Below, one piece after another: positions 19,397 through 53,765 of a stretch of DNA of 64,000 bases; within the stretch, counting starts at the first letter, position 1; each line of letters starts with the position of its first letter. Below the pieces are notes generated by a model that saw only the letters and a list, made by a program, of their open reading frames with translations, was not told where the DNA came from and did no database searches. A program made the translations under genes and the position numbers. Location: IMG/VR virus record IMGVR_UViG_3300028045_000001, positions 124,001 to 188,000 of that record; one strand, 5' to 3'.

Positions 19397-19397
19397 T

Positions 19398-20507
19398 ATG
19401 AAAATATTACACATTAGTGACATACATATGGGACATCCCAGGGTCCATGCGTCCATCACTTACAATAGCTTAAGGACGCATGTGTACCCATTGTTGAGTG
19501 ATGTCGATGTTTTAATTATAGGAGGGGATACTGCGGACAGGGGATTGGCATTGGATTCCTCTCCTAGTAGGATCATAGTGCAATTTTTAATGGACTTGTG
19601 CGATCTAATTAAAAAATACAACTTCCTTCTTAGGATCGTACGGGGCACGTGGAGCCATGATCGCGACTCCGTAAGAATTATAAATACTATAGCTAAGTCT
19701 AAGCGAGTTTCCAATAAGGTTAAATACTTTGACACTATTGAAATAGAATATATAAAAAAATTCAATAGATCCTTTATGTATGTCCCAGACGATGTGCCAT
19801 TTGATGATCTTGAACATAGGATTATAAACAAAATAAAAGATACTAAGACAGGTAAAGTAGATGTGATGGTGTTCCATGGCGCGATGAAGCATGCGTTGCC
19901 ATATATGCCAAAAGTGCCAGTCAATACAGTTAATGCAGACAATTGGAATGGCTATATAAATGAGGTGTGCTGCTGTGGCCATATACATCAAAGAAGTGTT
20001 TATAAAAATAAATTTATTTTTTCAGGATCGTTTGATCGATCGTGTCACGGAGATGAGGGGGCCAAAGGTTGCTTTCTAATAGACTTAAAGGACGATGGTA
20101 CTCGTAGAATAAAATTTATAGAGAACCCAAGCGCTGTTATTTTTAAGACACTTGACTTTAACAATATAAGTATGTCCGATGGTATCGATCTTATAGCAGA
20201 AACAATAGCCAAATGTAGCGAAGATAGATTGGATGTCGATATCCCCACGTATATCCGCATTCTTGTTAACGACATGATCACAAAAGCGGCCCTGTTGGGT
20301 CATACATCAAAGGCGTATGGAACGGTCAAAAATATCAAGATATCGTATAAGTCCGACAATGCCGATATAGTGGTCGATGTAGAGGAAGATGAAGAGGAAT
20401 CTGTATTTATCGTGACCCCTGATAACCTACCTCAAATAATAGCGGAACGTATCAATCAAAAACTATCTGTAGAAAGGATATCTGAAATATTGGATTGTAG
20501 TGGTTGA
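19398..20507 (+). CDS. sbcD: SbcD/Mre11-like metallophosphoesterase nuclease (phiKZ gp65-like)
   Basis: ISDIHMG, IGGDTAD, VRGTWSHD, FHG, CGHIHQ, SGSFDR motifs. Confidence 0.9.
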   Translation: MKILHISDIHMGHPRVHASITYNSLRTHVYPLLSDVDVLIIGGDTADRGLALDSSPSRIIVQFLMDLCDLIKKYNFLLRIVRGTWSHDRDSVRIINTIAKSKRVSNKVKYFDTIEIEYIKKFNRSFMYVPDDVPFDDLEHRIINKIKDTKTGKVDVMVFHGAMKHALPYMPKVPVNTVNADNWNGYINEVCCCGHIHQRSVYKNKFIFSGSFDRSCHGDEGAKGCFLIDLKDDGTRRIKFIENPSAVIFKTLDFNNISMSDGIDLIAETIAKCSEDRLDVDIPTYIRILVNDMITKAALLGHTSKAYGTVKNIKISYKSDNADIVVDVEEDEEESVFIVTPDNLPQIIAERINQKLSVERISEILDCSG

Positions 20508-20583: not shown

Positions 20584-20686
20584 TTCAATTAGTTTCACTT
20601 ATATATTACTATAACGAATAGGATAAGTTATATCGCCTGATTCATCGAAGTAGGTGCGACATTGGCTTGGCTTCAGTCGGCAAGAG
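20584..20686 (+). repeat. early promoter plus conserved 5' leader, copy 1 of 3
   Basis: 20592-20657 is identical over 66 nt to 47608-47673; near-identical core at 46956-47028. Confidence 0.9.
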
Positions 20687-25127: not shown

Positions 25128-27377
25128 ATGAAAAAAGAAACTTCCCACTTTGTAACAAAGTGGGCAGGTAAACAGATCAAACTACCATTAGATCCAGATG
25201 GAGTGTATGACTTCACAGTAGATTGGGGAGATGGCGCGATTGACCAGATAGCTGTACACGATCAAAGTGAAACGATGCACACTTACAAAGACAAACAAAA
25301 GTCCCATACCGTAACTATATCTGGCACCATAGAAGGGTTTGGATTTTACAAGGATCTCGAAGCAATTAACGGAGGATTGCTCGATGTACTTCAATGGGGA
25401 AATGTTAAGTTACATAACAAGGGGTATCAGTTTGCAGAGTGTAAGAAATTAAAGGGGTTTAGTGCCAAAGATGTTCTATATTTATCTAACGTAACTCATA
25501 TGGGGTGTATGTTCTATGAAGCCATATCCTTCAATCAGGACTTATCCAATTGGGATGTAAGTAGTGTTATTGATATGAACGGCATGTTCTGCGGAGCTAT
25601 GTCATTCAATCAGGACATCTCCACATGGGATGTGAGTAATGTTACCCGTATGTATGGCGTGTTCTTTAAGGCCACTTCTTTCAACCAAGACCTATCCAAG
25701 TGGGATGTTAGTAGTGTTATTAATATGGATGGCATGTTCAGTAAGGCTACATCCTTCAACCAAAGCATATCCACATGGGATGTGAGTAATGTTACCCGTA
25801 TGTATGGCATGTTCTCCGAGGCCGCATCTTTTAATCAGGACATATCCAAATGGGATGTGGGTAGTGTTACTGATATGCACGATATGTTTCTCAAAGCTTC
25901 ATCCTTCAATCAAGACATTTCCACATGGGATGTGAGTAATGTTACCAATATGGGCGCTATGCTCTCTACCGCTACTTCCTTCGACCAGGACATATCTAAC
26001 TGGGACGTAAGTAATGTAACTGATATGGAGCTGATGTTGGCGGGAGCTACATCCTTCAATCAAGACATTTCCACATGGGATGTGAGTAATGTTACTAATA
26101 TGAGCTATATGTTCGCTAACGCTTCATCCTTCAACCAAGATATCTCCACATGGGATGTGGGTAAGGTTGGTAACATGAAACAGATGTTCTCGGGAGCTTT
26201 GGTATTTAATAAGAATATCTCAGACTGGAATATCGGCAACGTCACTGATATGGAAGGCATGTTCAATAAAGCTTCTTCTTTCAACCAAGATATCTCCAAC
26301 TGGGATGTGGGTAAGGTTGGTAACATGAAACGTATGTTCTCTGAAGCCAAAGCTTTTAATCGAAATATCTCAGACTGGAATACCGGCAATGTTGAAGATA
26401 TGGCAGGTATGTTCTGGAGAGCCTTAGCTTTTAACCAAGGCATACCTAACTGGGATGTAAGTAGTGTTACCGATATGGAGCAGATGTTTGCAGGTGCTTC
26501 ATCCTTCAATCAAGATATATCAAAGTGGGATGTCCGTAGTGTTATTAATATAGATGAGATGTTCCAGGAAGCTACCTGTTTCAACCAAGACATATCCAAA
26601 TGGGATGTTAGTAGTGTTACTGGTATGGAGCATATGTTCTATAATGCCGCATCATTCAACCAAGATATATCCAACTGGGACGTTAGTAATGTTACTACTA
26701 TGGCTGGCATGTTTACAGGTGCTTCATCCTTCAACCAAGATATATCTAAATGGGATGTGAGTAGTGTTACTAATATGAGGCTTATGTTCGGCGAGGCTAC
26801 ATCCTTCAACCAAGACTTATCTAATTGGGACGTTAGCAGTGTCACCGATACAGCTGGGATGTTTCTCAAAGCTTCCTCCTTCAACCAAGATATATCTAAA
26901 TGGGATGTGGGTAGTGTTACTAATATGGAACAGATGTTCTGTTACGCCATAGTCTTCAATCAAGACATATCCAACTGGGATGTGAGTAATGTTGCAAATA
27001 TGATGCATATGTTCACACATGCCATGTTCTTCAACCAAGATATATCCAAATGGGATGTAAGCAGTGTTACTAATATGAGAGGTGTGTTCATTGGTACTTT
27101 GTTCTTCGATCAAGATATCTCTAAATGGGATGTAAGCAGTGTTACTGATATGCAGGGTACGTTCTGGGAAGCTACATCGTTTAACCAAGATATATCCACA
27201 TGGGACGTAAGTAATGTAACTGATATGAAGAATATGTTCGCTAAAGCCACATCCTTCAATCAAGACTTATCTAACTGGAATGTCGACAGTGTTACTAATA
27301 TGAAGAGTATGTTCGCTGGAGCCACATCCTTCGATCAAGACATATCCAAATGGGACATCAGTAATGACGATCGATAA
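25128..27377 (+). CDS. DUF285/BspA-type repeat protein, 25 x 25-aa repeats
   Basis: N-terminal FVTKW..KLPL....YDFTVDWGDG domain, then FNQDISxWDVSxVTxMxxMFxxAxS repeats; AAGGAG RBS; early promoter at 25057; no signal peptide. Confidence 0.9.
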   Translation: MKKETSHFVTKWAGKQIKLPLDPDGVYDFTVDWGDGAIDQIAVHDQSETMHTYKDKQKSHTVTISGTIEGFGFYKDLEAINGGLLDVLQWGNVKLHNKGYQFAECKKLKGFSAKDVLYLSNVTHMGCMFYEAISFNQDLSNWDVSSVIDMNGMFCGAMSFNQDISTWDVSNVTRMYGVFFKATSFNQDLSKWDVSSVINMDGMFSKATSFNQSISTWDVSNVTRMYGMFSEAASFNQDISKWDVGSVTDMHDMFLKASSFNQDISTWDVSNVTNMGAMLSTATSFDQDISNWDVSNVTDMELMLAGATSFNQDISTWDVSNVTNMSYMFANASSFNQDISTWDVGKVGNMKQMFSGALVFNKNISDWNIGNVTDMEGMFNKASSFNQDISNWDVGKVGNMKRMFSEAKAFNRNISDWNTGNVEDMAGMFWRALAFNQGIPNWDVSSVTDMEQMFAGASSFNQDISKWDVRSVINIDEMFQEATCFNQDISKWDVSSVTGMEHMFYNAASFNQDISNWDVSNVTTMAGMFTGASSFNQDISKWDVSSVTNMRLMFGEATSFNQDLSNWDVSSVTDTAGMFLKASSFNQDISKWDVGSVTNMEQMFCYAIVFNQDISNWDVSNVANMMHMFTHAMFFNQDISKWDVSSVTNMRGVFIGTLFFDQDISKWDVSSVTDMQGTFWEATSFNQDISTWDVSNVTDMKNMFAKATSFNQDLSNWNVDSVTNMKSMFAGATSFDQDISKWDISNDDR
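25490..27362 (+). repeat. 75-bp coding tandem repeat array
   Basis: 25 countable F[ND]xx[IL]xxW units at a 75-nt period. Confidence 0.9.
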
Positions 27378-28696: not shown

Positions 28697-29848
28697 ATGG
28701 AATCTGGACAATTATTTGTAACCGAGTGGCGTGGACATATGATAGTGTTACCGTTGAGTAAAAATGGAACATATGATTTTGTAGTAGATTGGGGAGATGG
28801 TACAACTATAAGTATAACGGAGTATAATCAGTCAGAAATCACGCATGCCTATAAGGACTCAAAGTTATTTCACATAGTAACTATATCCGGAATTATAGAA
28901 GGGTTTGGATTTGGATTTAATGGGGGAATTGGACCACAAGAATGTGAGTTGGTGGACGTTATTCAGTGGGGAAATGTCAAATTGAATAACGATGGATATC
29001 AATTTAATAATTGTATTGGGTTAAAGGGATTTAGTGCTAAAGACAGTCTCGACCTATCTAACATTACCAATATGAGTTATATGTTCTATGGGTCTATATC
29101 ATTCAATCAAGATATTTCTAACTGGGATGTGAGCATGGTTACGAGAATGGATAGTATGTTCCACTACGCTGTCTCTTTCAACCAAGATATATCCAAGTGG
29201 GAAGTTGATAATGTCACTGACATGAGATGTATGTTCTACGAGGCCATAGCATTCAATCAAGATACCTCTATGTGGAATGTTAGTAGTGTTACCGATATGC
29301 AATATATGTTCTGTGAAGCTGCTGCCTTCAACCAAGATATATCAAAGTGGGATGTAAGTAAGGTGATTGATATGAATCATATGCTCAATGGCATTTTATC
29401 CTTCGACCAGGACATATCTGATTGGGACGTTAGTAGTGTGACTAATATGAGTTATATGTTCTCTGACACTCTACGCTTCAACCAAGACATCTCTAATTGG
29501 GATGTGAGTAATGTTACTAATATGATGGGCATGTTTGCTGGTGCGAGTTCTTACAACCAAGATATATCTAATTGGAATGTTAGTAATGTTGCTAATATGG
29601 GGTTTATGTTTTATGGAGCTTCGTCCTTCAACCAAGATATCTCCAAATGGAATGTAAGTAATGTTACCGATATGAGGCACATGTTCAATAATGCCACATC
29701 ATTCGATCAGGACATCTCCACATGGGATGTGAGTAAGGTTGCTGAAATGGAGCATATGTTTTATGGAATCGAATCACACAATATTCCAACATTAAAATGG
29801 AGTATCATTAAAGCTGATGCCAACACACGTCAATCGGAAAGAACATAG
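28697..29848 (+). CDS. second DUF285/BspA-type repeat protein (9-10 repeats)
   Basis: Same N-terminal FVTEW..LPL....YDFVVDWGDG domain and 25-aa repeats; early promoter at 28624. Confidence 0.9.
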   Translation: MESGQLFVTEWRGHMIVLPLSKNGTYDFVVDWGDGTTISITEYNQSEITHAYKDSKLFHIVTISGIIEGFGFGFNGGIGPQECELVDVIQWGNVKLNNDGYQFNNCIGLKGFSAKDSLDLSNITNMSYMFYGSISFNQDISNWDVSMVTRMDSMFHYAVSFNQDISKWEVDNVTDMRCMFYEAIAFNQDTSMWNVSSVTDMQYMFCEAAAFNQDISKWDVSKVIDMNHMLNGILSFDQDISDWDVSSVTNMSYMFSDTLRFNQDISNWDVSNVTNMMGMFAGASSYNQDISNWNVSNVANMGFMFYGASSFNQDISKWNVSNVTDMRHMFNNATSFDQDISTWDVSKVAEMEHMFYGIESHNIPTLKWSIIKADANTRQSERT

Positions 29849-34149: not shown

Positions 34150-34208
34150 GTTATTACAACACCATACTTGATGACCAAGTGTCATCAAGTATGGTATGAT
34201 CGGGCATA

Positions 34209-34304
34209 TTTTTTTTATACTCAGAGCGTCTTTCAATTTTTATTACTTATATATGGCATCAATGAATCACAAGATTAGAATACTAATATAAAAATATAAA
34301 GGAG
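34209..34304 (+). repeat. about 96-bp promoter/leader/RBS direct repeat, copy A
   Basis: Near-identical to 35196-35292; includes TTCAAT...TATATGGC-N4-ATG and ends in AAAGGAG. Confidence 0.85.
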
Positions 34305-34311
34305 TTTAATT

Positions 34312-34659
34312 ATGAAAGAAGTCACTATCGCCGATCAACATCCCGGCAAATACCACGATGGACAAAAATTAATATTATGTGAATACAAAACTGACGACGG
34401 AGACTCCGGTATAACTGGTGTTCGAAGGGATAGTTCCAAAGAATTTGGAATGTTTAATTCGGAAAGAGAATGTATTCAAGACATTGGCTTTCGTAATGAC
34501 GAATGGATATTCACTATGTTTAACATTACAGATGTCAATCGAACCCACATTGACAAATTATTAGAAGATGGAACTGTAGTGATCGAGCGTTATTTTAAAG
34601 GAGACAACAAGGAACAGTGTGAGCCTTATTATTCATTAGAACTGAAGGTGATTGAATAA
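34312..34659 (+). CDS. hypothetical protein
   Basis: AAGGAG RBS within repeat copy A. Confidence 0.7.
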   Translation: MKEVTIADQHPGKYHDGQKLILCEYKTDDGDSGITGVRRDSSKEFGMFNSERECIQDIGFRNDEWIFTMFNITDVNRTHIDKLLEDGTVVIERYFKGDNKEQCEPYYSLELKVIE

Positions 34660-35135: not shown

Positions 35136-35195
35136 TTAGTGATATGTAATAACACGTACACACTGTATCGACGATACAGTGTGTACGGTTCTATT

Positions 35196-35292
35196 TTTTT
35201 TTTATACTCAGAGTGTCTTTCAATTTTTATTACTTATATATGACATCAATGAATCACAAGATTAGAATACTAATACAAAAAATATAAAGGAG
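35196..35292 (+). repeat. about 96-bp promoter/leader/RBS direct repeat, copy B
   Basis: See copy A at 34209; the two downstream genes are unrelated. Confidence 0.85.
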
Positions 35293-35299
35293 AATTATC

Positions 35300-35656
35300 A
35301 TGACAATTCAAATCAATATAGCAAAAATAGTATCAAATGTAGTATGTGTAGTTTTAGGAACAAAACGTTTCTGCCAAAAAGAAATCACAGAGCTTGCCAA
35401 ATCAAGAAAATCTGTTGAAGTACGTGCTTACCCATGTAACACTAAAGGTGACAATGTACATTCTGTTGTAGGCAAAGTTGTTAGAGTAAGTAAAGACTTT
35501 TTCGAAATTGAAGCAGTTGCAGAAACAGTATACGAAAATGGACGTGCACTTGTAAACTTAAGCAGAGTCGAACGATGTGAATTTGACAGTGTAGTTAACA
35601 TCAATGGCGTTCGTGTAAGTGACTTAGTAAAAGCTGGTCATAGCTACGCAATGTAA
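35300..35656 (+). CDS. hypothetical beta-rich protein
   Basis: AAGGAG RBS within repeat copy B. Confidence 0.7.
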   Translation: MTIQINIAKIVSNVVCVVLGTKRFCQKEITELAKSRKSVEVRAYPCNTKGDNVHSVVGKVVRVSKDFFEIEAVAETVYENGRALVNLSRVERCEFDSVVNINGVRVSDLVKAGHSYAM

Positions 35657-36910: not shown

Positions 36911-37744
36911 ATGCCTACCAAACAACCAAATAAATACAGTAAGGAAGAGGGCTCTATTCCTATTTATAGTTATGGTACAACTCCAGTCTGGGATACAATA
37001 TCACACTACGGGGAGTTCAATAAATTTTATTACGATGTGATCATAATAGACGCAACGACCATCATACGAAACATTGCATCGGACCATAAAGATCTGCCTT
37101 ACTATAAATTAAAACCGCTGATCAATGAAGAGCTGGGGGCATTGATGCAAGCTATCGCATTCGCCACCAAAAACTCTGGGATGATCAATGTAAAAATAAT
37201 AATATACCTTGCTAACTATGTTCGGAACATTAAAGAGATTTATCTTAAAACGAAGTATGGTAAACTAAACTCCATAGTGCATGGACATACATTGCAAGAA
37301 CTAAAGAATCCAGATAAAAATAGGGACATGCAACTTGACGACAACACCATTCTTCAGCAACGTATGATACGACACGGTAACGTCATCCCAGAGCTAAGGA
37401 TGTTGGCACATAACGCCGGGAACAGGAGTAAGATATTGCTGTTGTCCCATATGCCCTATTCGTATCACCTTACTGGATTTTACCCAGACATGCATCTAAT
37501 ATACAGCCACACTGGAGAGATACATGACCGATCGGTGCTGCCTAAAAAAGTATTTAAACATGGAGACATTCCATTCTATAATAGTACACATTTATTTTTT
37601 GGAGACTCTATTTTTTTAAAGGGTATAGCAAGTAATAAGCAAAAAAAAATAGCCAAACAGAAGGCTATAGATGACTCCTGGATAACCCAGCAAGAAGCGT
37701 ATGTTATTTTTGAATTAGAAGAAATACTAAAGAATGTAACGTAA
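36911..37744 (+). CDS. phiKZ gp66-like protein, possible PIN/5'-3' nuclease-like fold
   Basis: VIIIDATTIIRN N-terminal motif, LLLSH..Y; first gene of the gp66-70 block by synteny. Confidence 0.55.
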   Translation: MPTKQPNKYSKEEGSIPIYSYGTTPVWDTISHYGEFNKFYYDVIIIDATTIIRNIASDHKDLPYYKLKPLINEELGALMQAIAFATKNSGMINVKIIIYLANYVRNIKEIYLKTKYGKLNSIVHGHTLQELKNPDKNRDMQLDDNTILQQRMIRHGNVIPELRMLAHNAGNRSKILLLSHMPYSYHLTGFYPDMHLIYSHTGEIHDRSVLPKKVFKHGDIPFYNSTHLFFGDSIFLKGIASNKQKKIAKQKAIDDSWITQQEAYVIFELEEILKNVT

Positions 37745-37778: not shown

Positions 37779-38348
37779 ATGACGATCGCAATTTTAGGTC
37801 CTGAGGACAGAGTAAATTATAACTCTTTATTTAGATACCAGTTATACAACGGCAAGACCAAACAAAATGTTGTACTGAATGCTTGGCAAGGGTTTCTATC
37901 ATTCCAAGTATTTTCAAACAAACAACCTGCAGCAAGGGTGCCACTCAATATAAATTTGCTTCATACCTTGATATATCAAATTAAAAAGGTACGTGCCATG
38001 GGCCCCAACAGTGCGGTAACAGTCACTTCTACAAAATGGGATCCTAATACAAAATCGAATCTTCCAGTGGGAAGGATCATCGTAGGAAAAAATGATGAAA
38101 ATGTAATGACCTTGACCCTTAAGACACCCGACTCGGACAATCATTCCTTTGAAGTTACTATACCAGCCTCCGTAGCCTTTGATGATGACAACAAACAAGT
38201 GCGAGCTGAGATAGGTGTCAATACACTTATCAGTGTACTTGAACAGAGTATGGGTACGATGATAACTTCTAAGCGAGTTGATAAATTTAACAATCAGCAG
38301 TCTACAAACAACAATCAAAATATAAAAAATAACGACATTCCGTTTTAA
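37779..38348 (+). CDS. chmC: ChmC-like nucleic-acid-binding protein (phiKZ gp67-like)
   Basis: Beta-rich body with Asn/Gln-rich tail ending DIPF; position just upstream of the gp68-like genes. Confidence 0.6.
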   Translation: MTIAILGPEDRVNYNSLFRYQLYNGKTKQNVVLNAWQGFLSFQVFSNKQPAARVPLNINLLHTLIYQIKKVRAMGPNSAVTVTSTKWDPNTKSNLPVGRIIVGKNDENVMTLTLKTPDSDNHSFEVTIPASVAFDDDNKQVRAEIGVNTLISVLEQSMGTMITSKRVDKFNNQQSTNNNQNIKNNDIPF

Positions 38349-38372: not shown

Positions 38373-38402
38373 ATAGTCCCCTCAACTAGTTGAGGGGACT
38401 AT
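38373..38402. terminator. perfect 30-bp palindrome
   Basis: ATAGTCCCCTCAACT|AGTTGAGGGGACTAT. Confidence 0.65.
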
Positions 38403-38439
38403 AAACTAATATGTATATAAGACGACAAGGAGCAAGTCT

Positions 38440-39249
38440 ATGTTGCGGATAGTTGCAAAACCTAATGCAATACTAAGTGAGTTGGTTGGGATATGTGTAG
38501 TCACAGATCGTAGGTATGACGATACTCTGTTGTTATCGGATACTCAAACGAATAGAACGGTTTTTAGTGAGCTGTTTATTTCAGAAGAACACCCATGGGC
38601 AAATGGCACTGTGTCCAAATCATTAGAAATAGTAAATGAGTATTTTGCAACTATGAGCGAATTTGAAGAACAACAGTTTGTGCAACTGACGTGCGATATC
38701 GTCAATATATTGCTGTATTCTATGGGAGCTGAAGATATAAATATTAGGGACATGATGGAGTCTATAGGTGACGCAAAGTCGTACTATGAGAAACAAACTG
38801 GAATGTATGATAAATTATGTAGATTCATCAAAAGCAAAAAATATCCATATGAGCCAGATGTGCATAATACATCATCGTTTAAGCGAACAGACGTTGTCGT
38901 ACTGACGGCGTTTATTTTACACACTAAACTATTCCTACCTGTATTGCATATCCTCAATAATTTATGTCGAATGACATCCCAACCAAACAATACGATCGTA
39001 TTACTATCATGTAGGTTTTATACCAATTTTTTTTACAAGCACGGAGCAGCCACGCAAGATAAAATGATCGATTATATTAAAGGGGTATGTGACACAAAAA
39101 AAGAAACTGACGTTGTGTACGAGGTCATGTGTACATTAATTGCGATTCACTTCCCGACCATTTCTATAGATACTTTTGCTACCAACGCCGGGACAATCTT
39201 AAGGACACTAATTAAACTACAAGCAAACAAACTATCGATGAGGGCATGA
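38440..39249 (+). CDS. truncated paralog of the gp68-like nvRNAP specificity subunit (N-terminal half only)
   Basis: Collinear blocks with 39341..40909: NEYFATM/NKFFETF, DKLCRFI/KRIRQFV, ILHTKLFLPVL/IILCKILFPIM, KH..DKMIDYI/KH..IKIDDYI, VMCTL/IMSSL; AAGGAG RBS. Confidence 0.7.
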   Translation: MLRIVAKPNAILSELVGICVVTDRRYDDTLLLSDTQTNRTVFSELFISEEHPWANGTVSKSLEIVNEYFATMSEFEEQQFVQLTCDIVNILLYSMGAEDINIRDMMESIGDAKSYYEKQTGMYDKLCRFIKSKKYPYEPDVHNTSSFKRTDVVVLTAFILHTKLFLPVLHILNNLCRMTSQPNNTIVLLSCRFYTNFFYKHGAATQDKMIDYIKGVCDTKKETDVVYEVMCTLIAIHFPTISIDTFATNAGTILRTLIKLQANKLSMRA

Positions 39250-39253
39250 GTTT

Positions 39254-39286
39254 TCAATCAAATCTTATTTACATATTACAACTATG
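39254..39286 (+). promoter_or_regulatory. early promoter variant upstream of the gp68-like gene
   Basis: TCAAT-N13-CATATTAC-N4-ATG. Confidence 0.6.
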
Positions 39287-39340
39287 AAAAAAGTTTAGAT
39301 ATATACGAAAATATAATTATTTCTAAGGGAGAAAAAAGAG

Positions 39341-40909
39341 ATGCGATATACACATCGTAAATTAATAACTGGGAAGGTGCTTGCATTTATCGATGTCAGT
39401 CCAGAATTAAATATGGAAGATTTTGGTGGCGAGGATGTTCTCACATTTCAAATATCCACATATGGGAACATTAACAAATCAAAGATAAATGAAGCCGCGT
39501 GGAATAATGTATGCTACCCACCAAACAAATTTTTTGAAACATTCGATGTAGATGATTGTAGGAAATTCATCAGTGCTGTGGTTGATGTTAAATTAAACAT
39601 TATGACTTTCTTTGGGGAAGTGGATAACGGCGTAACTGATTTATCGCAACTACCCAAGTTCACTAAGAAATTATCTAACATGCTATTAAAGTTAGACGAA
39701 GAGATAAACTTATGTAAGCGCATACGACAGTTTGTTGACGATGAAGATATTCAAACTGGACTGGCAGAAAAGGTGGAGCTGCGGCCGCAAGATACCAAGG
39801 GACTGACAATAACCCAATTAGAAGCAAAGGACATAATATCTATAATAATACTGTGCAAGATATTATTCCCTATTATGGGCGAAATAATTGGAAGGTTAAA
39901 GCCCAATAATCTTGGAAAGCACCAAGACCCACATTGCAAAGCCATTACGATAGGTATGGTCTCCAAACACTGGAAAAAATTACATATCAAAATAGATGAT
40001 TACATTACTTACTTTGTTGCAAAGGAAACAAACCAAGCCAGGCTACACCATATCTATAATGGTATGAATGAATTAAGTTTGAGCATATTCATCATGTCAA
40101 GTTTATTTGTACGGAATTTTATTAACTACAATTTATTCGACACGAAGGAGAGATCAGTTCCTGGATACGTGCATTCCATCATAAATCATGTAGTAGGAAC
40201 ACAGTCCTCTCAGAGCTATAACAATCGGGTGGCCGAACGAAAGCCGCTCGTGTCCTCGGATGAAGATCCAAACAATGTAGCCGATCTAGAAGTGCACAGT
40301 GTATCAACTAAGGCACAGTTCGATACCTTGGCCATAATAGAGGCATGTATTCCTGACGTATCGAACAAAGCAATGTTGATGTATGAGATAGATACCGAGG
40401 AGGTTGACTCGGCATGTGCGTATCATCTAAAGAACCCAATTGAACCGAACATACTGACCACTTCATTACTGGCCGGGTTTTATAAATCATGGATGTCTGG
40501 TAAAAATATTAAATATTTAAATAATATCTCGTATACCCGTTTGGCGATCATACTTCAGTTTATCCTGATAGAGCAGAATAAATTCGAATTAGCTACGATG
40601 CTGACTTCTTTGACAACAGGGGTTATAAAGCCAATCGAGGGTATACCGATGCAGCAACTTAGGGCACACAATCAGAATTATAATTTGATAGAGCAGGAGT
40701 TCAGTACGAAGCAAGGGGCGACAGCAGAAAAGATGTGGAGAGATCACGTTACAAAAATAATAGAAACCCTTACGACAAGGGAATTCTTAATGAACATGTA
40801 CTATAAACTGTATGATACAATGAAGATGGAGAATTTAAATGGGCGCAAAATTTCTATAAAGAAGGACATCATGTTTCAATTTTATGAATTTATATCAGAG
40901 ATGCTGTAA
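39341..40909 (+). CDS. nvRNAP promoter-specificity (sigma-like) subunit, phiKZ gp68-like
   Basis: 522 aa, helical, IILCKILFPIMGE motif; synteny ChmC-gp68-gp69-gp70. Confidence 0.75.
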   Translation: MRYTHRKLITGKVLAFIDVSPELNMEDFGGEDVLTFQISTYGNINKSKINEAAWNNVCYPPNKFFETFDVDDCRKFISAVVDVKLNIMTFFGEVDNGVTDLSQLPKFTKKLSNMLLKLDEEINLCKRIRQFVDDEDIQTGLAEKVELRPQDTKGLTITQLEAKDIISIIILCKILFPIMGEIIGRLKPNNLGKHQDPHCKAITIGMVSKHWKKLHIKIDDYITYFVAKETNQARLHHIYNGMNELSLSIFIMSSLFVRNFINYNLFDTKERSVPGYVHSIINHVVGTQSSQSYNNRVAERKPLVSSDEDPNNVADLEVHSVSTKAQFDTLAIIEACIPDVSNKAMLMYEIDTEEVDSACAYHLKNPIEPNILTTSLLAGFYKSWMSGKNIKYLNNISYTRLAIILQFILIEQNKFELATMLTSLTTGVIKPIEGIPMQQLRAHNQNYNLIEQEFSTKQGATAEKMWRDHVTKIIETLTTREFLMNMYYKLYDTMKMENLNGRKISIKKDIMFQFYEFISEML

Positions 40910-40924
40910 ACACGAGGGGTCTAT

Positions 40925-42058
40925 ATGGACATAATCGGGTACATAAGTAAAGTTAAAAATGCTTGCATATCCTCCTATAGAGAAATGTGGCTGAGCGACG
41001 ATTTTACTTGCAGAGGACATGACGTGCACGTACCAGAATTATTTAAATTTAAATCTATAGGAGTATTATATGGCGTTATTGTAGAACGCACCTTCCTGTC
41101 ACTACAAAATCCTTTCTGTAAAAAGAAAGTACCGATATTCCCAATAGAAGCAGTGTACCATTATCCACATGATTCAGATACTGTGCGGATACTATACATA
41201 GGGCACATTGGTAGACTATTGGATATGCTGGACGACAATAGTGGCGAGTTGTATAAATCCTTGAATGAACTCATATTCGACTTTATAGGTCAGTATGACC
41301 AAGAAGATAATAGTCCAACTGTAATCGATTTAGAAAAATACTATAGGTCAGATACATTGGATAATGTATCTTACCATATTGACAATTTGTATACAGCGGT
41401 GACGCATTCATTTAAATCCAACTATAAGCCAGAAGGCTTCAATATAAGGAGTATGGGAGATAGGCAAGTAATTCCGGAAATATTAGAAGAGTGTATGGTT
41501 GAGTTGCCAATTAACGATAGGGTTGGCTCTACGCTATCTGTGATGGACCGTGTTACAAATAAAACCAGATGCTTGGGTCACATATTTTGTGGCCGTAGTG
41601 AAAGTAAGTTTAGATCCTTCATGCGGCCCCATGCATTACTTAATGCCGGAGATAACGATGTTATCCAAGACATATCATCGAACGAGGATGTGGATTTATA
41701 CGCTATAGCACAGTACATCCATGTCCATTATTATACGGATATATATGTCGTCATATCGAATAACTATGTCGATGTAAAGAGTCTCTATTCTTATATATTC
41801 GATACTGAGTTTATGGGGGAGTATGGAAAGAAACATTATAAGGCAGATCGTTTCCGAAGAGGGCTGTGGGAGACTATTGCACATAACACCTCATCGGCCA
41901 TTTCTCGTGATACTAAAATAACAATCCATAAAAATTCATATGATGAGCAATCATATGTTTTTAAGTTCTTAAATAAGTACGGAAATGTGGTTGAGCAAAA
42001 GTATTTTATAGATGGCCATCTCCTACAGCTGACATCACGCTCAATCATGCACATATAA
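40925..42058 (+). CDS. phiKZ gp69-like protein (PicA/Imp1 nuclear import factor by synteny)
   Basis: 377 aa directly after the gp68-like gene; assignment by conserved gene order only. Confidence 0.5.
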   Translation: MDIIGYISKVKNACISSYREMWLSDDFTCRGHDVHVPELFKFKSIGVLYGVIVERTFLSLQNPFCKKKVPIFPIEAVYHYPHDSDTVRILYIGHIGRLLDMLDDNSGELYKSLNELIFDFIGQYDQEDNSPTVIDLEKYYRSDTLDNVSYHIDNLYTAVTHSFKSNYKPEGFNIRSMGDRQVIPEILEECMVELPINDRVGSTLSVMDRVTNKTRCLGHIFCGRSESKFRSFMRPHALLNAGDNDVIQDISSNEDVDLYAIAQYIHVHYYTDIYVVISNNYVDVKSLYSYIFDTEFMGEYGKKHYKADRFRRGLWETIAHNTSSAISRDTKITIHKNSYDEQSYVFKFLNKYGNVVEQKYFIDGHLLQLTSRSIMHI

Positions 42059-42150: not shown

Positions 42151-43920
42151 ATGAGTAGTGGCATGCCTAGAGCCCCAATAACTGTGGCACCTATACCTGT
42201 TGCGGGAGAGATGTCTAATCACATGCAGACAGATATACGTACCCTAAATGCAACATTAATGGTGACTTCGCCAAGTAGCCATGGCGATATTATTGTCAGG
42301 CCCATACAATACGATTTTGGAGAAAAAGTTATAAATAGTATACACAATGCTATGGATGCCAATGCGGATTTAAGTAGGGCAACGCTTTCTGGGAGAGATC
42401 CAGTTATAGCGTCCGCCATACTTCCATCAAGTAATGGTATAGAGATGAACGCATCGCAGATCGCGGATCTGTGGTCATTTACACTCATGATCGATAATCC
42501 ACGAGAAGGATTCCGGGTACCCGGTAGTGACTCGAATGCGCCAACTGGCCAACGATCGACTTATACTGGATATGTTATCGGCGAACCGTTAAGTCTCGCA
42601 ACAAACGTAAGAAATCCGGATGCGATCTATATATCCACACATCTGAATAAAATATCCATATCCGAAAGCATTCTAAATGTTGGACATGCTGTAACAACAC
42701 ATATAACGACAGATGATGATATCATCCCAAACATGACGCAGCAGTATTACAAGGATGATTTAATGTTGTTATCTCCGGGCGATATGTATAGAGCATCTTA
42801 TATAGATGAAGATACTATGACTGGAGGCAACATCAATAATGCTGCTGTAAGTACGAATACTCCGAGTTGCTCAATAGGAATGACCTCCCTGCAATCTGCG
42901 CCGACATTTCATATGGATGGCATAGTCTCATCTGTCCATAGAACAATGTCCGACATAAATCACAGTCACAGTATGGAGAGTTCTATATTGCACCATAACA
43001 TTATGTCACCGCAGGACTCATTCAGGCAAGGTTTTTCTGACCAACTGTATTCTGCAGGTATTGGCAATCGTGTAAGACCGGGGGTTATCAATGGGATAGA
43101 TCACACTAAGCCCATCACTATGCGCGAGCTTGAGGCCGCCTATCCGCACATGGTGGTTATTCCAATAGTGAGGGATAGCGAGGTTCAGGAAGATGTTCGA
43201 TCGCAGGCGGGGGCCTCGCCACAAAATGTATTCTCTTCGATGGTTTCAACAACCATATCTGCAATTTGTGGACACCTCGGCATATCAAATGTTTCATTTA
43301 CATATGGATCTTGGATAGCTAACCTGCGGAGTTTAGGTGAAAATGGCATGTGGGAAATGCTTTCTTTCGGAACAATTGTTCCGAAAGCTGGTCAGGAACT
43401 TGAAGCATTACTGGGTACATTTAAAAGTCAATTAAATTCTGCCCTGTTCCAAGTACTGCTACACCAAAATGGGGATTTCTGGATTTCTGTTCAGTACTCA
43501 TCCATAGGAGACATAATCATTGACTTACAATTCAACGATTATAACGTGATATCTGGCCTATATGTAACATCTGCCAATCTTGGCGGCCTAAGTAAAGCAG
43601 CTATGGGCAACATAAATTCATTCGATCACAATGCCACATACTTAAGTATGCTCGCAGGCGCAATGGGCGGTATGTCTTCAGAGGTACCTCCGATGGAGGA
43701 CAGCTATCAAAGTCAGATATTCCAATCAAGTGGCCAGGTAGCTCCAGTCTCCCCACAGATCGCATCTGCTCACGTACATCCAGATTACAGAGTCACCCAA
43801 CAAGCACCAATAGTGTCGGATCACCATATTCCACATAACAATCAACAGGAGGCTCCTCCAGTAACGGGCAGGCGTTCACTGTTAGGTGGTAACGTATTAA
43901 GGTCTCCGTTGTTAAAATAA
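42151..43920 (+). CDS. phiKZ gp70-like conserved core protein
   Basis: 589 aa after the gp69-like gene; Pro/Gln-rich disordered C-terminus; AGGAGG RBS. Confidence 0.55.
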   Translation: MSSGMPRAPITVAPIPVAGEMSNHMQTDIRTLNATLMVTSPSSHGDIIVRPIQYDFGEKVINSIHNAMDANADLSRATLSGRDPVIASAILPSSNGIEMNASQIADLWSFTLMIDNPREGFRVPGSDSNAPTGQRSTYTGYVIGEPLSLATNVRNPDAIYISTHLNKISISESILNVGHAVTTHITTDDDIIPNMTQQYYKDDLMLLSPGDMYRASYIDEDTMTGGNINNAAVSTNTPSCSIGMTSLQSAPTFHMDGIVSSVHRTMSDINHSHSMESSILHHNIMSPQDSFRQGFSDQLYSAGIGNRVRPGVINGIDHTKPITMRELEAAYPHMVVIPIVRDSEVQEDVRSQAGASPQNVFSSMVSTTISAICGHLGISNVSFTYGSWIANLRSLGENGMWEMLSFGTIVPKAGQELEALLGTFKSQLNSALFQVLLHQNGDFWISVQYSSIGDIIIDLQFNDYNVISGLYVTSANLGGLSKAAMGNINSFDHNATYLSMLAGAMGGMSSEVPPMEDSYQSQIFQSSGQVAPVSPQIASAHVHPDYRVTQQAPIVSDHHIPHNNQQEAPPVTGRRSLLGGNVLRSPLLK

Positions 43921-46955: not shown

Positions 46956-47044
46956 TTCAATTAGTTTCACTTATATATTACTAAAACGAATAGGATAAGT
47001 TATATCGCCTGATTCATCGAGTGGGTGCACGACTGACTTGACTT
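46956..47044 (+). repeat. early promoter plus conserved 5' leader, copy 2 of 3
   Basis: TTCAATTAGTTTCACTTATATATTACTAAAACGAATAGGATAAGTTATATCGCCTGATTCATCGAGTGGGTGC. Confidence 0.85.
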
Positions 47045-47599: not shown

Positions 47600-47702
47600 T
47601 TCGAACTGTTTCACTTATATATTACTATAACGAATAGGATAAGTTATATCGCCTGATTCATCGAAGTAGGTGCAGTATTGACTTGGCTTCAGTCGACAAG
47701 AG
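47600..47702 (+). repeat. early promoter plus conserved 5' leader, copy 3 of 3
   Basis: 66 nt identical to copy 1; the 3' part ATTGACTTGGCTTCAGTCGACAAGAG is also conserved. Confidence 0.9.
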
Positions 47703-51490: not shown

Positions 51491-53605
51491 ATGGAGGTAC
51501 CCCAATTGAAGAAACGAACCCGAGCCTCAAATTTAAAGCAGTACCAGGAAGATTACCCGTACTTAGACAATTGCAACATAGACCATAGGTTACTTGGAAC
51601 CACTTTGTTTACTTCTGGATGTGAGCACAATTCCAGCGCGAGGATGGCCATGATGCATTCTCAAATAACGCAGGCCCTCAATATATTTGGTGGGGAACGC
51701 CAAAGAGTCTTTACTGGGTTTGACGATCAACTAAAGAACTATGGGTTCAATGATACCAAACAAACTGAGGACATAACTATAATTGCAGTCATACCAAAAA
51801 TTCGTAATATTGGGTCTGCCGGAAGTATTAAGTCTAATCCTAAGTCTACAGTAATATACGTAAATAAAGATAACACTGCGGGATATTTCAATGTAAATAG
51901 TTATGAAGAATTGGGGGACGGATTTGGGTATGAGACAAGGAGAATAAATTCTCATTTATTAGCTCCTAATACGCTTGTTAAAGCGAACACACCATTTACG
52001 GAACCACCTGGCGGTGGGGAGTTGGGTTGCAATGCAATGGTGGCAATGATGCGGTCCATATATACTTCAGAAGATGCTTTCGCTATAAGTGAATCATTTG
52101 CTAAAAGGAATCAAACTTATGGTATGTCGAAAGCATTCGTAGAAATCAACAAAAATCAAATACCCGCTAACATAATGGGCGATGAAGAAGAATATAAATT
52201 CATGCCCGATATAGGAGAGCAAGTTGGCGACGATGGGATACTGTGCGCCATAAAGACACCAAAGGTAGATGTGATACTCAATGAGCTCTCCGATAATTCA
52301 ACGAGGCCAGACTATCTACATGACGCATTGTACAAAGTCCCACCTGGAGCAACGATAGTTAACATCGAAGTATATTGTGATCCAAAATTTAATAAAAACA
52401 AATCAAAATATTTTGATCAGTTAAGGAAATACAGAGATCAAAGTAAACGTTACTGGACGGAATTAATTGAAGTATATAAAAAATTAAAATCAGATAGGGT
52501 CAAACTCTCGCCAACGCTACATGCACTGTTCGCTAGAGCTTTGTCCTTTGCTCCTATCCATACTAAGAAACAAGGTAACTTAATGGTCGAGGGTGGTGTC
52601 CAGGTCAAGTTCATTTATATTGAAGTGACCTACTCATGGATACAATCGGTACAGCGGGGATTTAAGTTCACTGGGACAGAAGGTGGGAAAGGAACTATTT
52701 GCGAGATACTGCCGGACGAATTTATGCCTACAAATGAGTACGGAGAGACAGCAGATGTTATAATCGATCCTATCACTGTTTTAAATAGAATGAATCTGGG
52801 GCAAGATTATGTAATGTTTTTAAATAGAACCTCCGATACAATAATGCGCTTTATGAACATAGGTATAGATGCAGATGATTTAAACAAGACCTCCCGCACA
52901 ATTGTAAGCGACATAAATAACGGACACATCGCAGACCCGTATGAGTATATATTAAAATATTTGACAATGGTAAACGAAAACTACGCCAATCTTATAAGAG
53001 GATTGTACGATAATGATCGGGATACTTTTGTGGGCATGTGTGTGGCGGACGGGATACATATAAATTATCCCCCATATCTAAATACACTCACTAAGGAGCG
53101 CATTATAGAAATAGCAGATACCTTTTGTGTAAGGAACACTCCTGTCTCTTTCTGTATTAGAAAGAGGGATGGTACCATCAAACGGGTGACCACTGAGAAT
53201 CCAGTACCCATGGGAAGGAAGTATATGATGGTACTATGTAAGGTGCCACATGTGAATAGTGCTGGCGTTGGGAGGGTATCTCAATTCTTGGTACCTATAA
53301 AGCCAAATTCTACGGACAAAGTATTGAAGAAAAGAACTGCAGTACGTTCAACTGCAATCAGGTTCGGTGAAGATGAGATTAGAAACTTACATATGTCCGC
53401 TGGGGTTGAAGCAACTGCAAGATTACTGTGTGTGTATGGATGTACTCCAGATGCAACATATATGCTAATGCAAGAAATATTGAATGCAGCCAAACCGAGT
53501 CATATAAATAGGATACCAATGAAAACTTCAGAGTGTATAAAAAAGAACAGGTACATAAGTATTCAAAAAAGCATGATGGCTATAGCTGGAATAGAGGTTG
53601 AGTAA
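51491..53605 (+). CDS. non-virion RNA polymerase beta C-terminal subunit (phiKZ gp71/73-like), uninterrupted
   Basis: NSSARMAMMHSQITQA, SEDAFAIS, GFKFTGTEGGKGTI, NRMNLGQ, IRFGEDE. Confidence 0.92.
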   Translation: MEVPQLKKRTRASNLKQYQEDYPYLDNCNIDHRLLGTTLFTSGCEHNSSARMAMMHSQITQALNIFGGERQRVFTGFDDQLKNYGFNDTKQTEDITIIAVIPKIRNIGSAGSIKSNPKSTVIYVNKDNTAGYFNVNSYEELGDGFGYETRRINSHLLAPNTLVKANTPFTEPPGGGELGCNAMVAMMRSIYTSEDAFAISESFAKRNQTYGMSKAFVEINKNQIPANIMGDEEEYKFMPDIGEQVGDDGILCAIKTPKVDVILNELSDNSTRPDYLHDALYKVPPGATIVNIEVYCDPKFNKNKSKYFDQLRKYRDQSKRYWTELIEVYKKLKSDRVKLSPTLHALFARALSFAPIHTKKQGNLMVEGGVQVKFIYIEVTYSWIQSVQRGFKFTGTEGGKGTICEILPDEFMPTNEYGETADVIIDPITVLNRMNLGQDYVMFLNRTSDTIMRFMNIGIDADDLNKTSRTIVSDINNGHIADPYEYILKYLTMVNENYANLIRGLYDNDRDTFVGMCVADGIHINYPPYLNTLTKERIIEIADTFCVRNTPVSFCIRKRDGTIKRVTTENPVPMGRKYMMVLCKVPHVNSAGVGRVSQFLVPIKPNSTDKVLKKRTAVRSTAIRFGEDEIRNLHMSAGVEATARLLCVYGCTPDATYMLMQEILNAAKPSHINRIPMKTSECIKKNRYISIQKSMMAIAGIEVE

Positions 53606-53697
53606 TAGCATAAGTAGTTGAGGGAAGTCCCTCAACTACTTATGTAACACGTGAATAGAATTCGGCAATATGCCGTCCGGTACACTAACAATAAATT

Positions 53698-53730
53698 TCA
53701 ATCACACTTTATTTATATGTTACATGTATG
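53698..53730 (+). promoter_or_regulatory. early promoter variant upstream of the beta' C-terminal subunit gene
   Basis: TCAAT-N13-TATGTTAC-N4-ATG; implies the CDS starts downstream of the ORF-track start. Confidence 0.6.
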
Positions 53731-53765
53731 GAATCTTGACTATGGACATAACTAACGGGGTACAC

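What the first reader, a model, noticed from the sequence alone, without database searches (positions are those of the whole stretch)
38440..39249. Half-length paralog of the nvRNAP sigma-like subunit (gp68) directly upstream of the full gene
Seen: six collinear blocks align the 269-aa ORF with the N-terminal about 285 aa of the 522-aa gp68-like protein: MLRIVAK..L..I.V/MRYTHRK..L..I.V; VNEYFATM..FEEQQFV...DI/PNKFFETF..DDCRKFI...DV; MYDKLCRFI/LCKRIRQFV; ILHTKLFLPVL/IILCKILFPIM; KH......DKMIDYI/KH......IKIDDYI; VMCTL....F/IMSSL....F. The C-terminal half is absent. The full gene has an early-type promoter (39254-39286). The short one instead has TAATATGTA (38407), also found before the gp66-like gene (36862), which contains the TATG of phiKZ late promoters. 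Known: gp68 (AR9 gp226) is the promoter-specificity subunit with a sigma-like NTD plus a CTD, and how nvRNAP switches between middle and late promoters is unresolved. Inference: a second specificity factor or a competitive anti-sigma-like regulator, i.e. a possible sigma-switch for a jumbo-phage nvRNAP.
Basis: partly seen in the sequence, partly recalled or inferred. Interest (0 to 1): 0.85.

Follow-up and report, generated by a model that had tools for sequence, protein, structure and literature searches.

The report
Stand-alone copy of gp68's N-terminal domain
A very divergent phiKZ-like jumbo phage carries, just upstream of the gene for the sigma-like fifth subunit of its own RNA polymerase (gp68), an extra 269-residue gene that profile comparisons identify as a probable, highly diverged copy of only that subunit's N-terminal DNA-opening domain; this arrangement was seen in no other phage examined, and its function is untested.

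Summary
The ORF (38440-39249, 269 aa) is real. It has a Shine-Dalgarno site, native codon usage, a hairpin upstream, and is 100% conserved on six metagenomic contigs.

The 522-aa neighbour is a genuine gp68. Its family HMM E-value is 2e-10, and its AlphaFold model's best PDB matches are phiKZ gp68 and AR9 gp226.

Pairwise, the two proteins are not significantly similar (BLASTP E 0.26).
- hhalign score 30.8-33.8, P 6e-4 to 2e-3.
- 300 shuffles reach at most 27.0; 87 other window ORFs reach at most 21.5.
- This phage's own gp68 N-terminal domain scores the same (32.6).

HMMER (E 4e-4), jackknifed profiles and predicted helix positions agree.

ORF269 matches only the N-terminal domain and lacks the C-terminal domain that anchors gp68 in the polymerase. 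It therefore cannot replace gp68 as an integral subunit.

No other chimallivirus examined has a gene between gp67 and gp68 (36 loci), or a BLAST-detectable second gp68 (180 genomes).

A regulatory or alternative-specificity role is plausible but untested. No homologues exist, so selection and fold could not be assessed.

The parts
36911..37744 (+). gp66-like gene (277 aa), the conserved left neighbour of the gp67-gp68 block
   Evidence: phrog_3229 E 2.4e-12. HMM of 32 chimallivirus gp66 sequences E 4.4e-12.
37779..38348 (+). 189-aa ORF, tentative gp67/ChmC counterpart, with an N/Q-rich C-terminal tail
   Evidence: Best window hit of the gp67 HMM, E 0.005 among 173 ORFs. hhalign P 0.009-0.022. 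It occupies the gp67 position. The assignment is weak.
38373..38402 (+). Perfect 13-bp hairpin (core CCCTCAAC/GTTGAGGG) between the 189-aa ORF and ORF269; terminator- or processing-like
   Evidence: MFE -26.8 kcal/mol, z -4.95. Terminator-like scan hit on the - strand at 38404-38371. The same 8-mer core occurs in the hairpin before the beta'-like gene.
38407..38415 (+). TAATATGTA (core TATGTA 38410-38415), 30 nt before the ATG; candidate non-early promoter or 5'-end element
   Evidence: The exact 9-mer is not enriched. TATGTA on the + strand is intergenic in 15 of 45 cases against 11.6% expected, rank 1 of 60 matched hexamers. It follows a hairpin at four sites.
38427..38432 (+). Shine-Dalgarno AAGGAG of ORF269
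   Evidence: Read directly from the sequence.
38440..39249 (+). ORF269: probable stand-alone, highly diverged copy of the gp68 N-terminal domain
   Evidence: hhalign against gp68 profiles: 30.6-33.8, P 6e-4 to 1.8e-3, 162-170 columns. Controls. HMMER with an NTD-only HMM: E 4e-4. Helix agreement 79%, MCC 0.52. 11 of 31 family-conserved columns identical. No homologues anywhere else.
39265..39287 (+). Early-type promoter motif of gp68-like: TTATTTACATATTAC followed by AACTATGA
   Evidence: It differs by one base from the recurrent TTATTTATATATTAC; the 15-mer search (up to 3 mismatches) gave 36 matches against 9.1 expected. Upstream listing.
39341..40909 (+). gp68-like gene (522 aa): sigma-like fifth subunit of the non-virion RNA polymerase, with both N- and C-terminal domains
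   Evidence: BLASTP against PhiPA3 gp62 E 3e-8. gp68 HMM E 1.9e-10. hhalign 62.8-64.9 over 449 columns. AlphaFold model (pLDDT 65.7) best matches 8QUE_B at 1.6e-10 and AR9 gp226 7S01_A at 8.5e-6.
40925..42058 (+). ORF377: second lineage-specific orphan, 15 nt after gp68-like, between gp68 and gp69-like
   Evidence: No Pfam or PHROG family. No gp66-69 profile match better than P 0.011. Atlas search uninformative. Absent from the 36 other loci inspected.
42151..43920 (+). gp69-like gene (589 aa), the conserved right neighbour
   Evidence: gp69 HMM E 1.3e-5. hhalign 52.4, P 3.5e-6, 388 columns.

Best explanation
ORF269 is a real gene. It encodes a free-standing, strongly diverged copy of only the N-terminal domain (NTD) of gp68, the sigma-like fifth subunit of the jumbo-phage non-virion RNA polymerase (nvRNAP).

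Origin (inferred). The most economical origin is duplication of gp68, or of its 5' half, next to the parent gene in this lineage, followed by loss of the C-terminal domain (CTD) and long divergence.

What the published structures imply. In phiKZ and AR9 the NTD is the flexible, sigma2-like module. It grips the upstream fork and non-template strand and helps open the bubble. The CTD is the part that anchors the subunit in the beta/beta' core. ORF269 therefore cannot be an integral replacement subunit.

Most likely mode of action (inferred, not shown). It acts in trans, binding the NTD's usual partners. These are the docking surface on the polymerase body and/or fork DNA. In doing so it would modulate, most simply by competition, open-complex formation by the resident polymerase.

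Transcription (inferred). ORF269 lies in its own unit behind a hairpin and a TATGTA element. No terminator separates it from gp68-like, so its transcript probably reads on into gp68-like, which in addition has its own early-type promoter.

Shown here: the gene, its uniqueness, and the profile-level homology to the gp68 NTD. Inferred: the duplication, the trans action and the timing.
For: Homology.
- hhalign against three differently built gp68 profiles gives 30.6-33.8, P 6e-4 to 1.8e-3, over 162-170 collinear columns on the main diagonal: ORF269 41/49-224 to phiKZ gp68 23-221.
- 0 of 300 shuffles reach it (max 27.0), the reversed sequence scores 13.0, and the best of 87 other window ORFs scores 21.5.
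- 11 of 12 jackknife half-profiles return the same register.
- An NTD-only HMM gives E 4e-4 with envelope 55-230.
- This phage's authentic gp68 residues 1-240 score only 32.6 (P 8e-4) against the same foreign profile. ORF269 is therefore as good a family NTD as the real one.
- At 31 family-conserved NTD columns ORF269 is identical at 11 and similar at 20, against 8 and 18 for the resident gp68. The matches include W53, K60 (phiKZ K34, a non-template-strand contact per PMC12809450), the invariant N66, P136 and P167.
- Independently predicted helices coincide: 79% agreement, MCC 0.52, and 0 of 311 shifted registers do as well.

Domain logic. ORF269 is 269 aa. The AR9 gp226 NTD is residues 1-264 and folds on its own; the phiKZ gp68 NTD is about 1-277/303 (PMC9209446).

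Gene reality. SD site, native codon usage, and identical sequence on six contigs from several samples.

Uniqueness. 36 other chimallivirus loci have gp66-gp67-gp68-gp69 with nothing inserted. 180 phage genomes each have exactly one gp68 match.

Shared regulation hint. A hairpin with the same 8-mer core followed by TATGTA, 29-30 nt before the ATG, precedes both ORF269 and the nvRNAP beta'-like gene.
Against: - HH-suite's own probability is only 15-29%.
- With my ORF-derived alignment the score drops to 25.2 (P 0.011). A presumably spurious pair, ORF377 against gp66, reaches 24.8.
- BLASTP and a full-length gp68 HMM see nothing.
- There is no fold evidence. AlphaFold single-sequence pLDDT is 36, ESM Atlas pLDDT is 0.35, and the Foldseek search was meaningless.
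- The first ~40 and last ~45 residues are not covered by the alignment.
- Equivalents of phiKZ R36 and R244/R245 and the near-invariant G158 are not kept.
- ORF269 has no homologue in 1.84 billion representatives, and the six contigs are identical, so purifying selection cannot be shown.
- Nothing tests binding or activity.
- ORF269 is not closer to the resident gp68 than to foreign ones, so in-place duplication is not demonstrated.
Confidence: 0.55

Rival explanations
1. True gp68-NTD paralog, but a relic. It would be a duplicated 5' half that is drifting, or that has been recruited to a job unrelated to transcription, with no effect on the polymerase.
For: - Extreme divergence: 12-17% identity.
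- Several DNA-contact or near-invariant positions are lost, namely the R36, R244/R245 and G158 equivalents.
- It is a singleton with no homologues.
- Many orphan genes populate this genome, including ORF377 on the other side of gp68.
Against: - An intact 269-codon frame with an SD site and native codon usage.
- Identities are concentrated at family-conserved columns, at least as many as in the resident gp68. This suggests retained fold constraints.
- Its length equals the whole NTD domain rather than an arbitrary fragment (PMC9209446).
Confidence: 0.2
2. No homology. ORF269 would be an unrelated lineage-specific all-helical orphan, and the match to gp68 a chance resemblance between helical proteins of similar composition.
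For: - BLASTP E 0.26; the full-length HMM gives E 3.6.
- hhalign probability is below 30%.
- Score depends on the alignment used, 25-34.
- The candidate was picked by eye from one window, so some selection bias applies.
Against: - 0 of 300 shuffles and 0 of 87 real ORFs reach the score.
- The register lies on the main diagonal and is stable to jackknifing and to removal of the resident gp68.
- HMMER independently gives E 4e-4.
- Helix positions agree best at exactly shift 0.
- The score equals that of the authentic NTD of this phage.
- The gene is adjacent to gp68.
Confidence: 0.2
3. Alternative specificity subunit, the full 'sigma switch'. ORF269 would replace gp68 in the holoenzyme, or serve the virion RNA polymerase, and redirect it to another promoter class.
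For: - Homology to the sigma2-like NTD.
- A different upstream element from gp68-like.
- A precedent from general knowledge: T4 gp55 is a sigma2-only late factor.
Against: - ORF269 lacks the CTD. In phiKZ the CTD makes the large anchoring interface, and gp68 is needed during assembly (PMC8287921).
- In phiKZ the TATG motif is read by GP123, and the authors argue the enzyme has lost configurability (PMC12809450).
- No second promoter class was tied to ORF269 here.
Confidence: 0.1
4. ORF269 is the displaced gp67/ChmC ortholog. It has the right size and the right slot between gp66 and gp68.
For: gp67 proteins are 224-290 aa and always lie between gp66 and gp68.
Against: - hhalign against ChmC profiles gives P 0.16-0.28 over short stretches.
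- The gp67 HMM prefers the 189-aa ORF.
- ORF269 is predicted all-helical.
Confidence: 0.03

Closest known systems
phiKZ gp68 (PHIKZ068; PDB 7OGP, 7OGR, 8QUE, 9RJS), the sigma-like fifth subunit of the chimallivirus non-virion RNA polymerase
   Same: ORF269 aligns to residues about 23-221 of phiKZ gp68, i.e. to its NTD, with the same helix order. It keeps W27, K34, N48, Y94, P115, D139, L143, P155, L178 and Y209 in phiKZ numbering.
   Different: - It has no linker and no CTD (gp68 about 300-521), which is the anchoring part.
- It is a separate gene, additional to a complete gp68.
- Identity is 12-17%.
- Equivalents of R36, R244/R245 and G158 are not kept.
- No fold or binding data exist.
AR9 gp226 (PDB 7S01, 7UM0, 7UM1), the promoter-specificity subunit of the AR9 nvRNAP
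   Same: Domain logic. The gp226 NTD (1-264) is an autonomously folded, protease-resistant sigma2-like module that captures the non-template strand (PMC9209446). ORF269 has that size. The resident gp68-like model matches 7S01_A.
   Different: ORF269 was not compared with gp226 directly, because no sequence reference was available. gp226 is dissociable and full length; ORF269 is NTD-only.
T4 gp55, with gp33: a minimal sigma2-only late sigma factor (from general knowledge, not tested here)
   Same: A phage protein consisting essentially of a sigma region-2-like module, acting without a sigma4-like anchor.
   Different: There is no detectable sequence relation. T4 gp55 works on the host polymerase together with gp33 and the sliding clamp. 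Nothing shows that ORF269 confers specificity.
ChmC (PhiPA3 gp61 / phiKZ gp67), the usual occupant of the slot between gp66 and gp68
   Same: Similar length and genomic position.
   Different: No profile similarity. The 189-aa ORF upstream is the better, though weak, ChmC candidate.

Membership tests
gp68/gp226 family (sigma-like fifth subunit of jumbo-phage nvRNAP) | Profile-level sequence similarity to the family N-terminal domain | tested here: met
   hhalign 30.6-33.8, P 6e-4 to 1.8e-3, 162-170 columns. HMMER NTD HMM E 4e-4. Controls. The signal is weak in absolute terms (HH probability 15-29%) but equals the score of this phage's authentic gp68 NTD.
gp68/gp226 family (sigma-like fifth subunit of jumbo-phage nvRNAP) | Linker plus C-terminal domain that anchors the subunit to the beta/beta' core | tested here: not met
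   The ORF stops at residue 269. The next gene is in another frame, 91 nt away, behind its own promoter. The hhalign match ends at profile column 237 of 545. ORF269 is therefore not a complete family member.
gp68/gp226 family (sigma-like fifth subunit of jumbo-phage nvRNAP) | NTD fold (sigma2-like helices within a larger helical domain) | tested here: inconclusive
   The AlphaFold single-sequence model has pLDDT 36 and the Foldseek search was meaningless. Only helix positions could be compared: 79% agreement, MCC 0.52, best at shift 0.
gp68/gp226 family (sigma-like fifth subunit of jumbo-phage nvRNAP) | Single-copy gene in the conserved gp66-gp67-gp68-gp69 order | tested here: not met
   The orthologous slot is filled by the 522-aa gene. 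ORF269 is an extra gene seen in none of 36 other loci, and no second copy is detectable in 180 genomes.
gp68/gp226 family (sigma-like fifth subunit of jumbo-phage nvRNAP) | Physical association with the nvRNAP and a requirement for promoter DNA binding | not testable with these tools
   This needs co-purification, EMSA and in vitro transcription.
Bacterial sigma-70 family | Match to Pfam sigma region 2/3/4 models | tested here: not met
   No sigma family among the Pfam hits at E up to 1. The same is true of authentic gp68.
ChmC / gp67 family | Profile similarity to the ChmC family | tested here: not met
   hhalign P 0.16 and 0.28 over short stretches. ORF269 is not among the gp67 HMM's listed window hits, i.e. 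E > 10.

The most novel reading that the evidence does not exclude
ORF269 is a functional, dissociable sigma2-only factor comparable in logic to T4 gp55. It would dock on this phage's non-virion (or virion) RNA polymerase in place of, or beside, the tethered gp68 NTD. It would change which DNA is opened, giving a chimallivirus polymerase a configurable promoter-selection step that the phiKZ structures suggest has been lost.
Probability: 0.15. Interest if true: 0.85.

Novelty: new variant of a known kind. Interest (0 to 1): 0.55.

Why it matters
The structural papers on phiKZ conclude that embedding the sigma-like subunit made the nvRNAP non-configurable. How middle and late promoter classes are told apart is still unclear. 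A natural, separately encoded copy of just the DNA-opening NTD, next to a complete gp68, is the kind of part that could act as a competitor or an alternative module. It would give a concrete handle for testing whether such polymerases can be modulated in trans.

It also shows that the NTD can exist as an independent gene. This fits the observation that the AR9 gp226 NTD folds autonomously.

There are limits. It is a singleton in an uncultured phage, the homology is remote, and nothing is known about expression or binding.

Tried and rejected
- Database searches with ORF269 found only itself or artefacts: tblastn and megablast against 50,697 phage records, the word-indexed search of 5.8 billion proteins, and exhaustive phmmer against 1.84 billion representatives. 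The two extra hits of the last search are tandem-repeat artefacts.
- Pfam, PHROGs and PDB sequence searches gave nothing.
- The ESM Atlas gave only generic HEAT/ARM-like helical look-alikes.
- The AlphaFold single-sequence model was unusable (pLDDT 36), and its Foldseek search was meaningless.
- The profile search of the 5.8-billion-protein set with alignment A1 returned only the query.
- The metagenome scan with A5 returned one ordinary chimallivirus locus at 23% identity, so no close relatives of this phage are available.
I rebuilt the alignment without them as A5.
- Population variation: the contigs are identical apart from one SNP in gp68-like, so no dN/dS could be computed.
- Phylogeny of the NTD including ORF269 was abandoned. 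hmmalign places only 104 columns at about 15% identity.
- A split or fused gene was rejected. ORF269 and gp68-like are in different frames, 91 nt apart with a promoter motif between them, and gp68-like aligns to the family from residue 29 to 520.
- ORF377 as the missing CTD was rejected: hhalign against gp68 gives P 0.27.
- ORF269 as ChmC was rejected.
- The partial tblastn hits to gp68 in Vibrio and Shewanella phages turned out to be full-length genes in the standard order.
Full report
WHAT THE WINDOW IS

PHROG scans identify a phiKZ-type DNA polymerase, three multisubunit RNA-polymerase beta/beta' fragments (7089-8546, 51491-53605, 53670-55883), SbcD, a helicase and virion proteins. The nvRNAP beta fragment is only 25-29% identical to any of 224 sequenced relatives, and no DNA-level match exists. 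The window is part of a 239,960-bp uncultured viral contig (IMGVR_UViG_3300028045_000001). It is therefore a very divergent member of the nucleus-forming jumbo phages (Chimalliviridae).

THE OBSERVATION

The ORF at 38440-39249 (269 aa) is as described.
- AAGGAG lies 7 nt before the ATG.
- Codon usage resembles that of the phage's genes in the annotated frame only (0.119 bits per codon; the other five frames are negative). GC equals that of its neighbours.
- The identical protein is called on six contigs from JGI, ENA and Logan assemblies. Their DNA is identical in this region apart from one SNP inside gp68-like.

Taken pairwise they are not convincing.
- BLASTP's best segment (E 0.26) is off-register.
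- Smith-Waterman z is 1.2-1.8.
- Only with lenient gaps does z reach 2.2-2.7, with gp68-like ranking first of 22 control proteins by a small margin.

IDENTITY OF THE NEIGHBOURS

I collected the gp68 region of 36 other chimalliviruses and built family HMMs for 34 of them (L001-L004, L012-L041). Every one has the order SbcD, gp66 (~280 aa), gp67 (224-290 aa), gp68 (~505-555 aa), gp69 (~480-560 aa), with nothing in between.

Family HMMs identify the window's genes as follows.
- 36911-37744 is gp66 (E 4e-12).
- 39341-40909 is gp68 (E 2e-10).
- 42151-43920 is gp69 (E 1e-5).
- 37779-38348 (189 aa) is, weakly, the best gp67/ChmC candidate (E 0.005; hhalign P 0.009-0.022).

Further support for the 522-aa protein:
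- It matches PhiPA3 gp62 by BLASTP (3e-8).
- The family profile hits PDB PHIKZ068 at 9e-183.
- Its AlphaFold model (pLDDT 65.7) has as its seven best PDB matches the four phiKZ gp68 chains and three AR9 gp226 chains (8QUE_B 1.6e-10, 7S01_A 8.5e-6).

This phage therefore has a complete gp68, flanked by two lineage-specific extra genes: ORF269 upstream and ORF377 (40925-42058) downstream. A tblastn with PhiPA3 gp68 finds exactly one place in each of 180 phage genomes, so no BLAST-detectable second copy is known.

IS ORF269 RELATED TO GP68?

It has no relatives at all in any database searched. Everything therefore rests on comparing the single sequence with gp68 profiles. A full-length gp68 HMM does not pick it up (E 3.6), and a 5-sequence hhalign did not either.

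With a 30-sequence profile, hhalign gives score 33.8, P 6e-4, over 162 columns. ORF269 49-224 pairs with gp68-like 32-235.
- VNEYFATM...FEEQQF with the family's EINxYWAxLPxxxQ.
- DKLCRFI with DLxxWL.
- ILHTKLFLPVL with ALRPMIPIWGE.
- DKMIDYI with xKLxxYI.

Checks on that result:
(a) Removing the window's own gp68 from the profile leaves 30.8, P 1.8e-3, 170 columns.
(b) A re-alignment with L-INS-i and phiKZ gp68 added gives 30.6, P 1.8e-3.
(c) 300 shuffles of ORF269 give mean 15.3, sd 2.6, max 27.0; the reversed sequence gives 13.0.
(d) 87 other window ORFs of at least 100 aa give at most 21.5, mostly over 10-40 columns.
(e) ORF269 against the gp66, gp67 and gp69 profiles gives 12-16.
(f) 11 of 12 random half-profiles return the same long register, with scores 19-31.
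(g) An NTD-only HMM in HMMER gives E 4e-4 for the single comparison, envelope 55-230.
(h) The most useful calibration: residues 1-240 of this phage's authentic gp68 score 32.6 (P 8e-4, 176 columns) against the same foreign profile. That is the same as ORF269. In this lineage a true gp68 NTD looks no better than ORF269 does.
(i) At the 31 NTD columns conserved in at least 70% of foreign gp68s, ORF269 has the consensus residue at 11 and a similar one at 20. The resident gp68 has 8 and 18.
(j) Helix positions were predicted independently, from a single-sequence model for ORF269 and an alignment-based model for gp68-like. They agree at 79% of aligned positions (MCC 0.52). Agreement peaks at shift 0, and none of 311 shifted registers reaches it.

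Caveats:
- HH-suite's own probability is 15-29%.
- With my cruder alignment the score is 25.2 (P 0.011).
- One presumably spurious pair (ORF377 against gp66) reaches 24.8.
- The candidate was chosen by eye.
- No fold is available.

I put the probability of true homology at about 0.75-0.8.

WHAT PART OF GP68 IT IS

The match covers phiKZ gp68 residues about 23-221. It sits inside the NTD, which published work places at about 1-277/303 in gp68 and 1-264 in AR9 gp226. The gp226 NTD folds and resists protease on its own (PMC9209446).

Published roles of the two domains:
- The NTD is flexible in the apo enzyme. It becomes ordered on promoter DNA, sits at the point of strand separation, and guides the non-template strand through a basic groove formed by K34, R36, R244 and R245 (PMC12809450).
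- The CTD makes the large interface that embeds gp68 in the core, and gp68 is needed during assembly (PMC8287921).

ORF269 keeps the K34 equivalent (K60). It also keeps W27, N48, Y94, P115 and P155 (phiKZ numbering); the W27, K34, Y94 and P115 positions are ones the resident gp68 has lost.

It is no closer to the resident gp68 (11.5-12% identity) than to foreign ones (15-17%). Duplication in place is the simplest origin given adjacency, but it is not demonstrated.

TRANSCRIPTION SIGNALS

A motif, TTATTTATATATTAC, usually followed by TATnATGA, recurs on the + strand before many genes. The search allowing up to 3 mismatches gives 36 matches against 9 expected, and TATATTAC is intergenic in 16 of 17 + strand cases. 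The one-mismatch copy at 39265-39279 precedes gp68-like.

ORF269 has no such motif. It follows a perfect 13-bp hairpin (38373-38402, z -4.95) and TAATATGTA.
- The 9-mer is not enriched.
- The core TATGTA is enriched. It is intergenic on the + strand in 15 of 45 cases against 11.6% expected, first of 60 composition-matched hexamers.
- At four sites TATGTA follows a hairpin directly.
- The hairpin before the nvRNAP beta'-like gene (53608-53645) shares the 8-mer GTTGAGGG/CCCTCAAC with the ORF269 hairpin. It is likewise followed by TATGTA 29 nt before the ATG.

In phiKZ, TATG marks late start sites and is read by GP123 rather than gp68 (PMC12809450). Whether TATGTA is a promoter here is not shown. 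No terminator separates ORF269 from gp68-like, so read-through into gp68-like and ORF377 is likely.

INTERPRETATION

The best-supported reading is a stand-alone, highly diverged copy of the gp68 NTD. Because it lacks the anchor domain it cannot be an integral fifth subunit. If it acts on transcription, it must do so in trans, by occupying the NTD docking site or fork DNA.

A relic or re-purposed duplicate, and chance resemblance, remain serious rivals.

NOVELTY

I found no report of a second or NTD-only gp68-like gene, and none in the 36 loci and 180 genomes examined. It is a new variant of a known kind.

Noticed in passing
window 40925-42058 (+): ORF377 is a second lineage-specific orphan, 15 nt downstream of gp68-like and before gp69-like. 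It is absent from all 36 other chimallivirus loci inspected. It has no Pfam, PHROG, profile or Atlas lead. gp68 in this phage is therefore bracketed by two unique genes.
   Followed up: partly
window 38373-38415 and 53608-53646 (+): Two perfect hairpins (13 and 17 bp) share the core GTTGAGGG/CCCTCAAC. Each is followed by TATGTA 29-30 nt before a start codon, of ORF269 and of the nvRNAP beta'-like gene. Hairpin-then-TATGTA also occurs at 46446 and 61531. This could be a terminator-promoter or RNA-processing module.
   Followed up: partly
window, + strand intergenic regions (e.g. 9334, 24246, 25050, 28617, 31521, 42076, 61564): A strongly recurrent motif, TTATTTATATATTAC, usually followed by TATnATGA. 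Allowing up to 3 mismatches there are 36 matches against 9 expected, nearly all upstream of + strand genes. It is a probable early (virion-RNAP) promoter class of this phage.
   Followed up: partly
window 20595-20667, about 46967-47040 and 47611-47683; also 34200-34312 and 35190-35300: Near-identical promoter-leader cassettes are repeated before different small genes. One is cacttatatattactataacgaataggataagttatatcgcctgattcatcga, seen before 20667 and 47683 and partly near 46967. A second ~100-nt leader is shared by the genes at 34312 and 35300.
   Followed up: no
window 19290-20507 versus 36911: The SbcD-like gene lies about 16 kb upstream of gp66-like. In all other chimalliviruses inspected it is immediately adjacent to gp66. 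This is a synteny break filled with small orphan genes and two repeat-rich proteins.
   Followed up: no
window 25128-27377 and 28697-29848 (+): Two proteins (749 and 383 aa) are built of many internal repeats. They match PHROGs 17273, 22899, 3649 and 35701 in up to 10 stretches each (E down to 2e-216). Function unknown.
   Followed up: no
window 39539 (inside gp68-like): This is the only difference among the contigs carrying this region: A in the window, G in contig Ga0233413_10020802.
   Followed up: no
window 39341-40909, residues 36, 43, 119, 140: The resident gp68-like has lost several residues that are conserved in foreign gp68 NTDs and that ORF269 keeps: W27 to F, K34 to N, Y94 to D, P115 to G in phiKZ numbering. 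Conversely it keeps Y32, T134 and G158, which ORF269 lacks. The pattern is compatible with complementary divergence of two copies, but it is not tested.
   Followed up: partly
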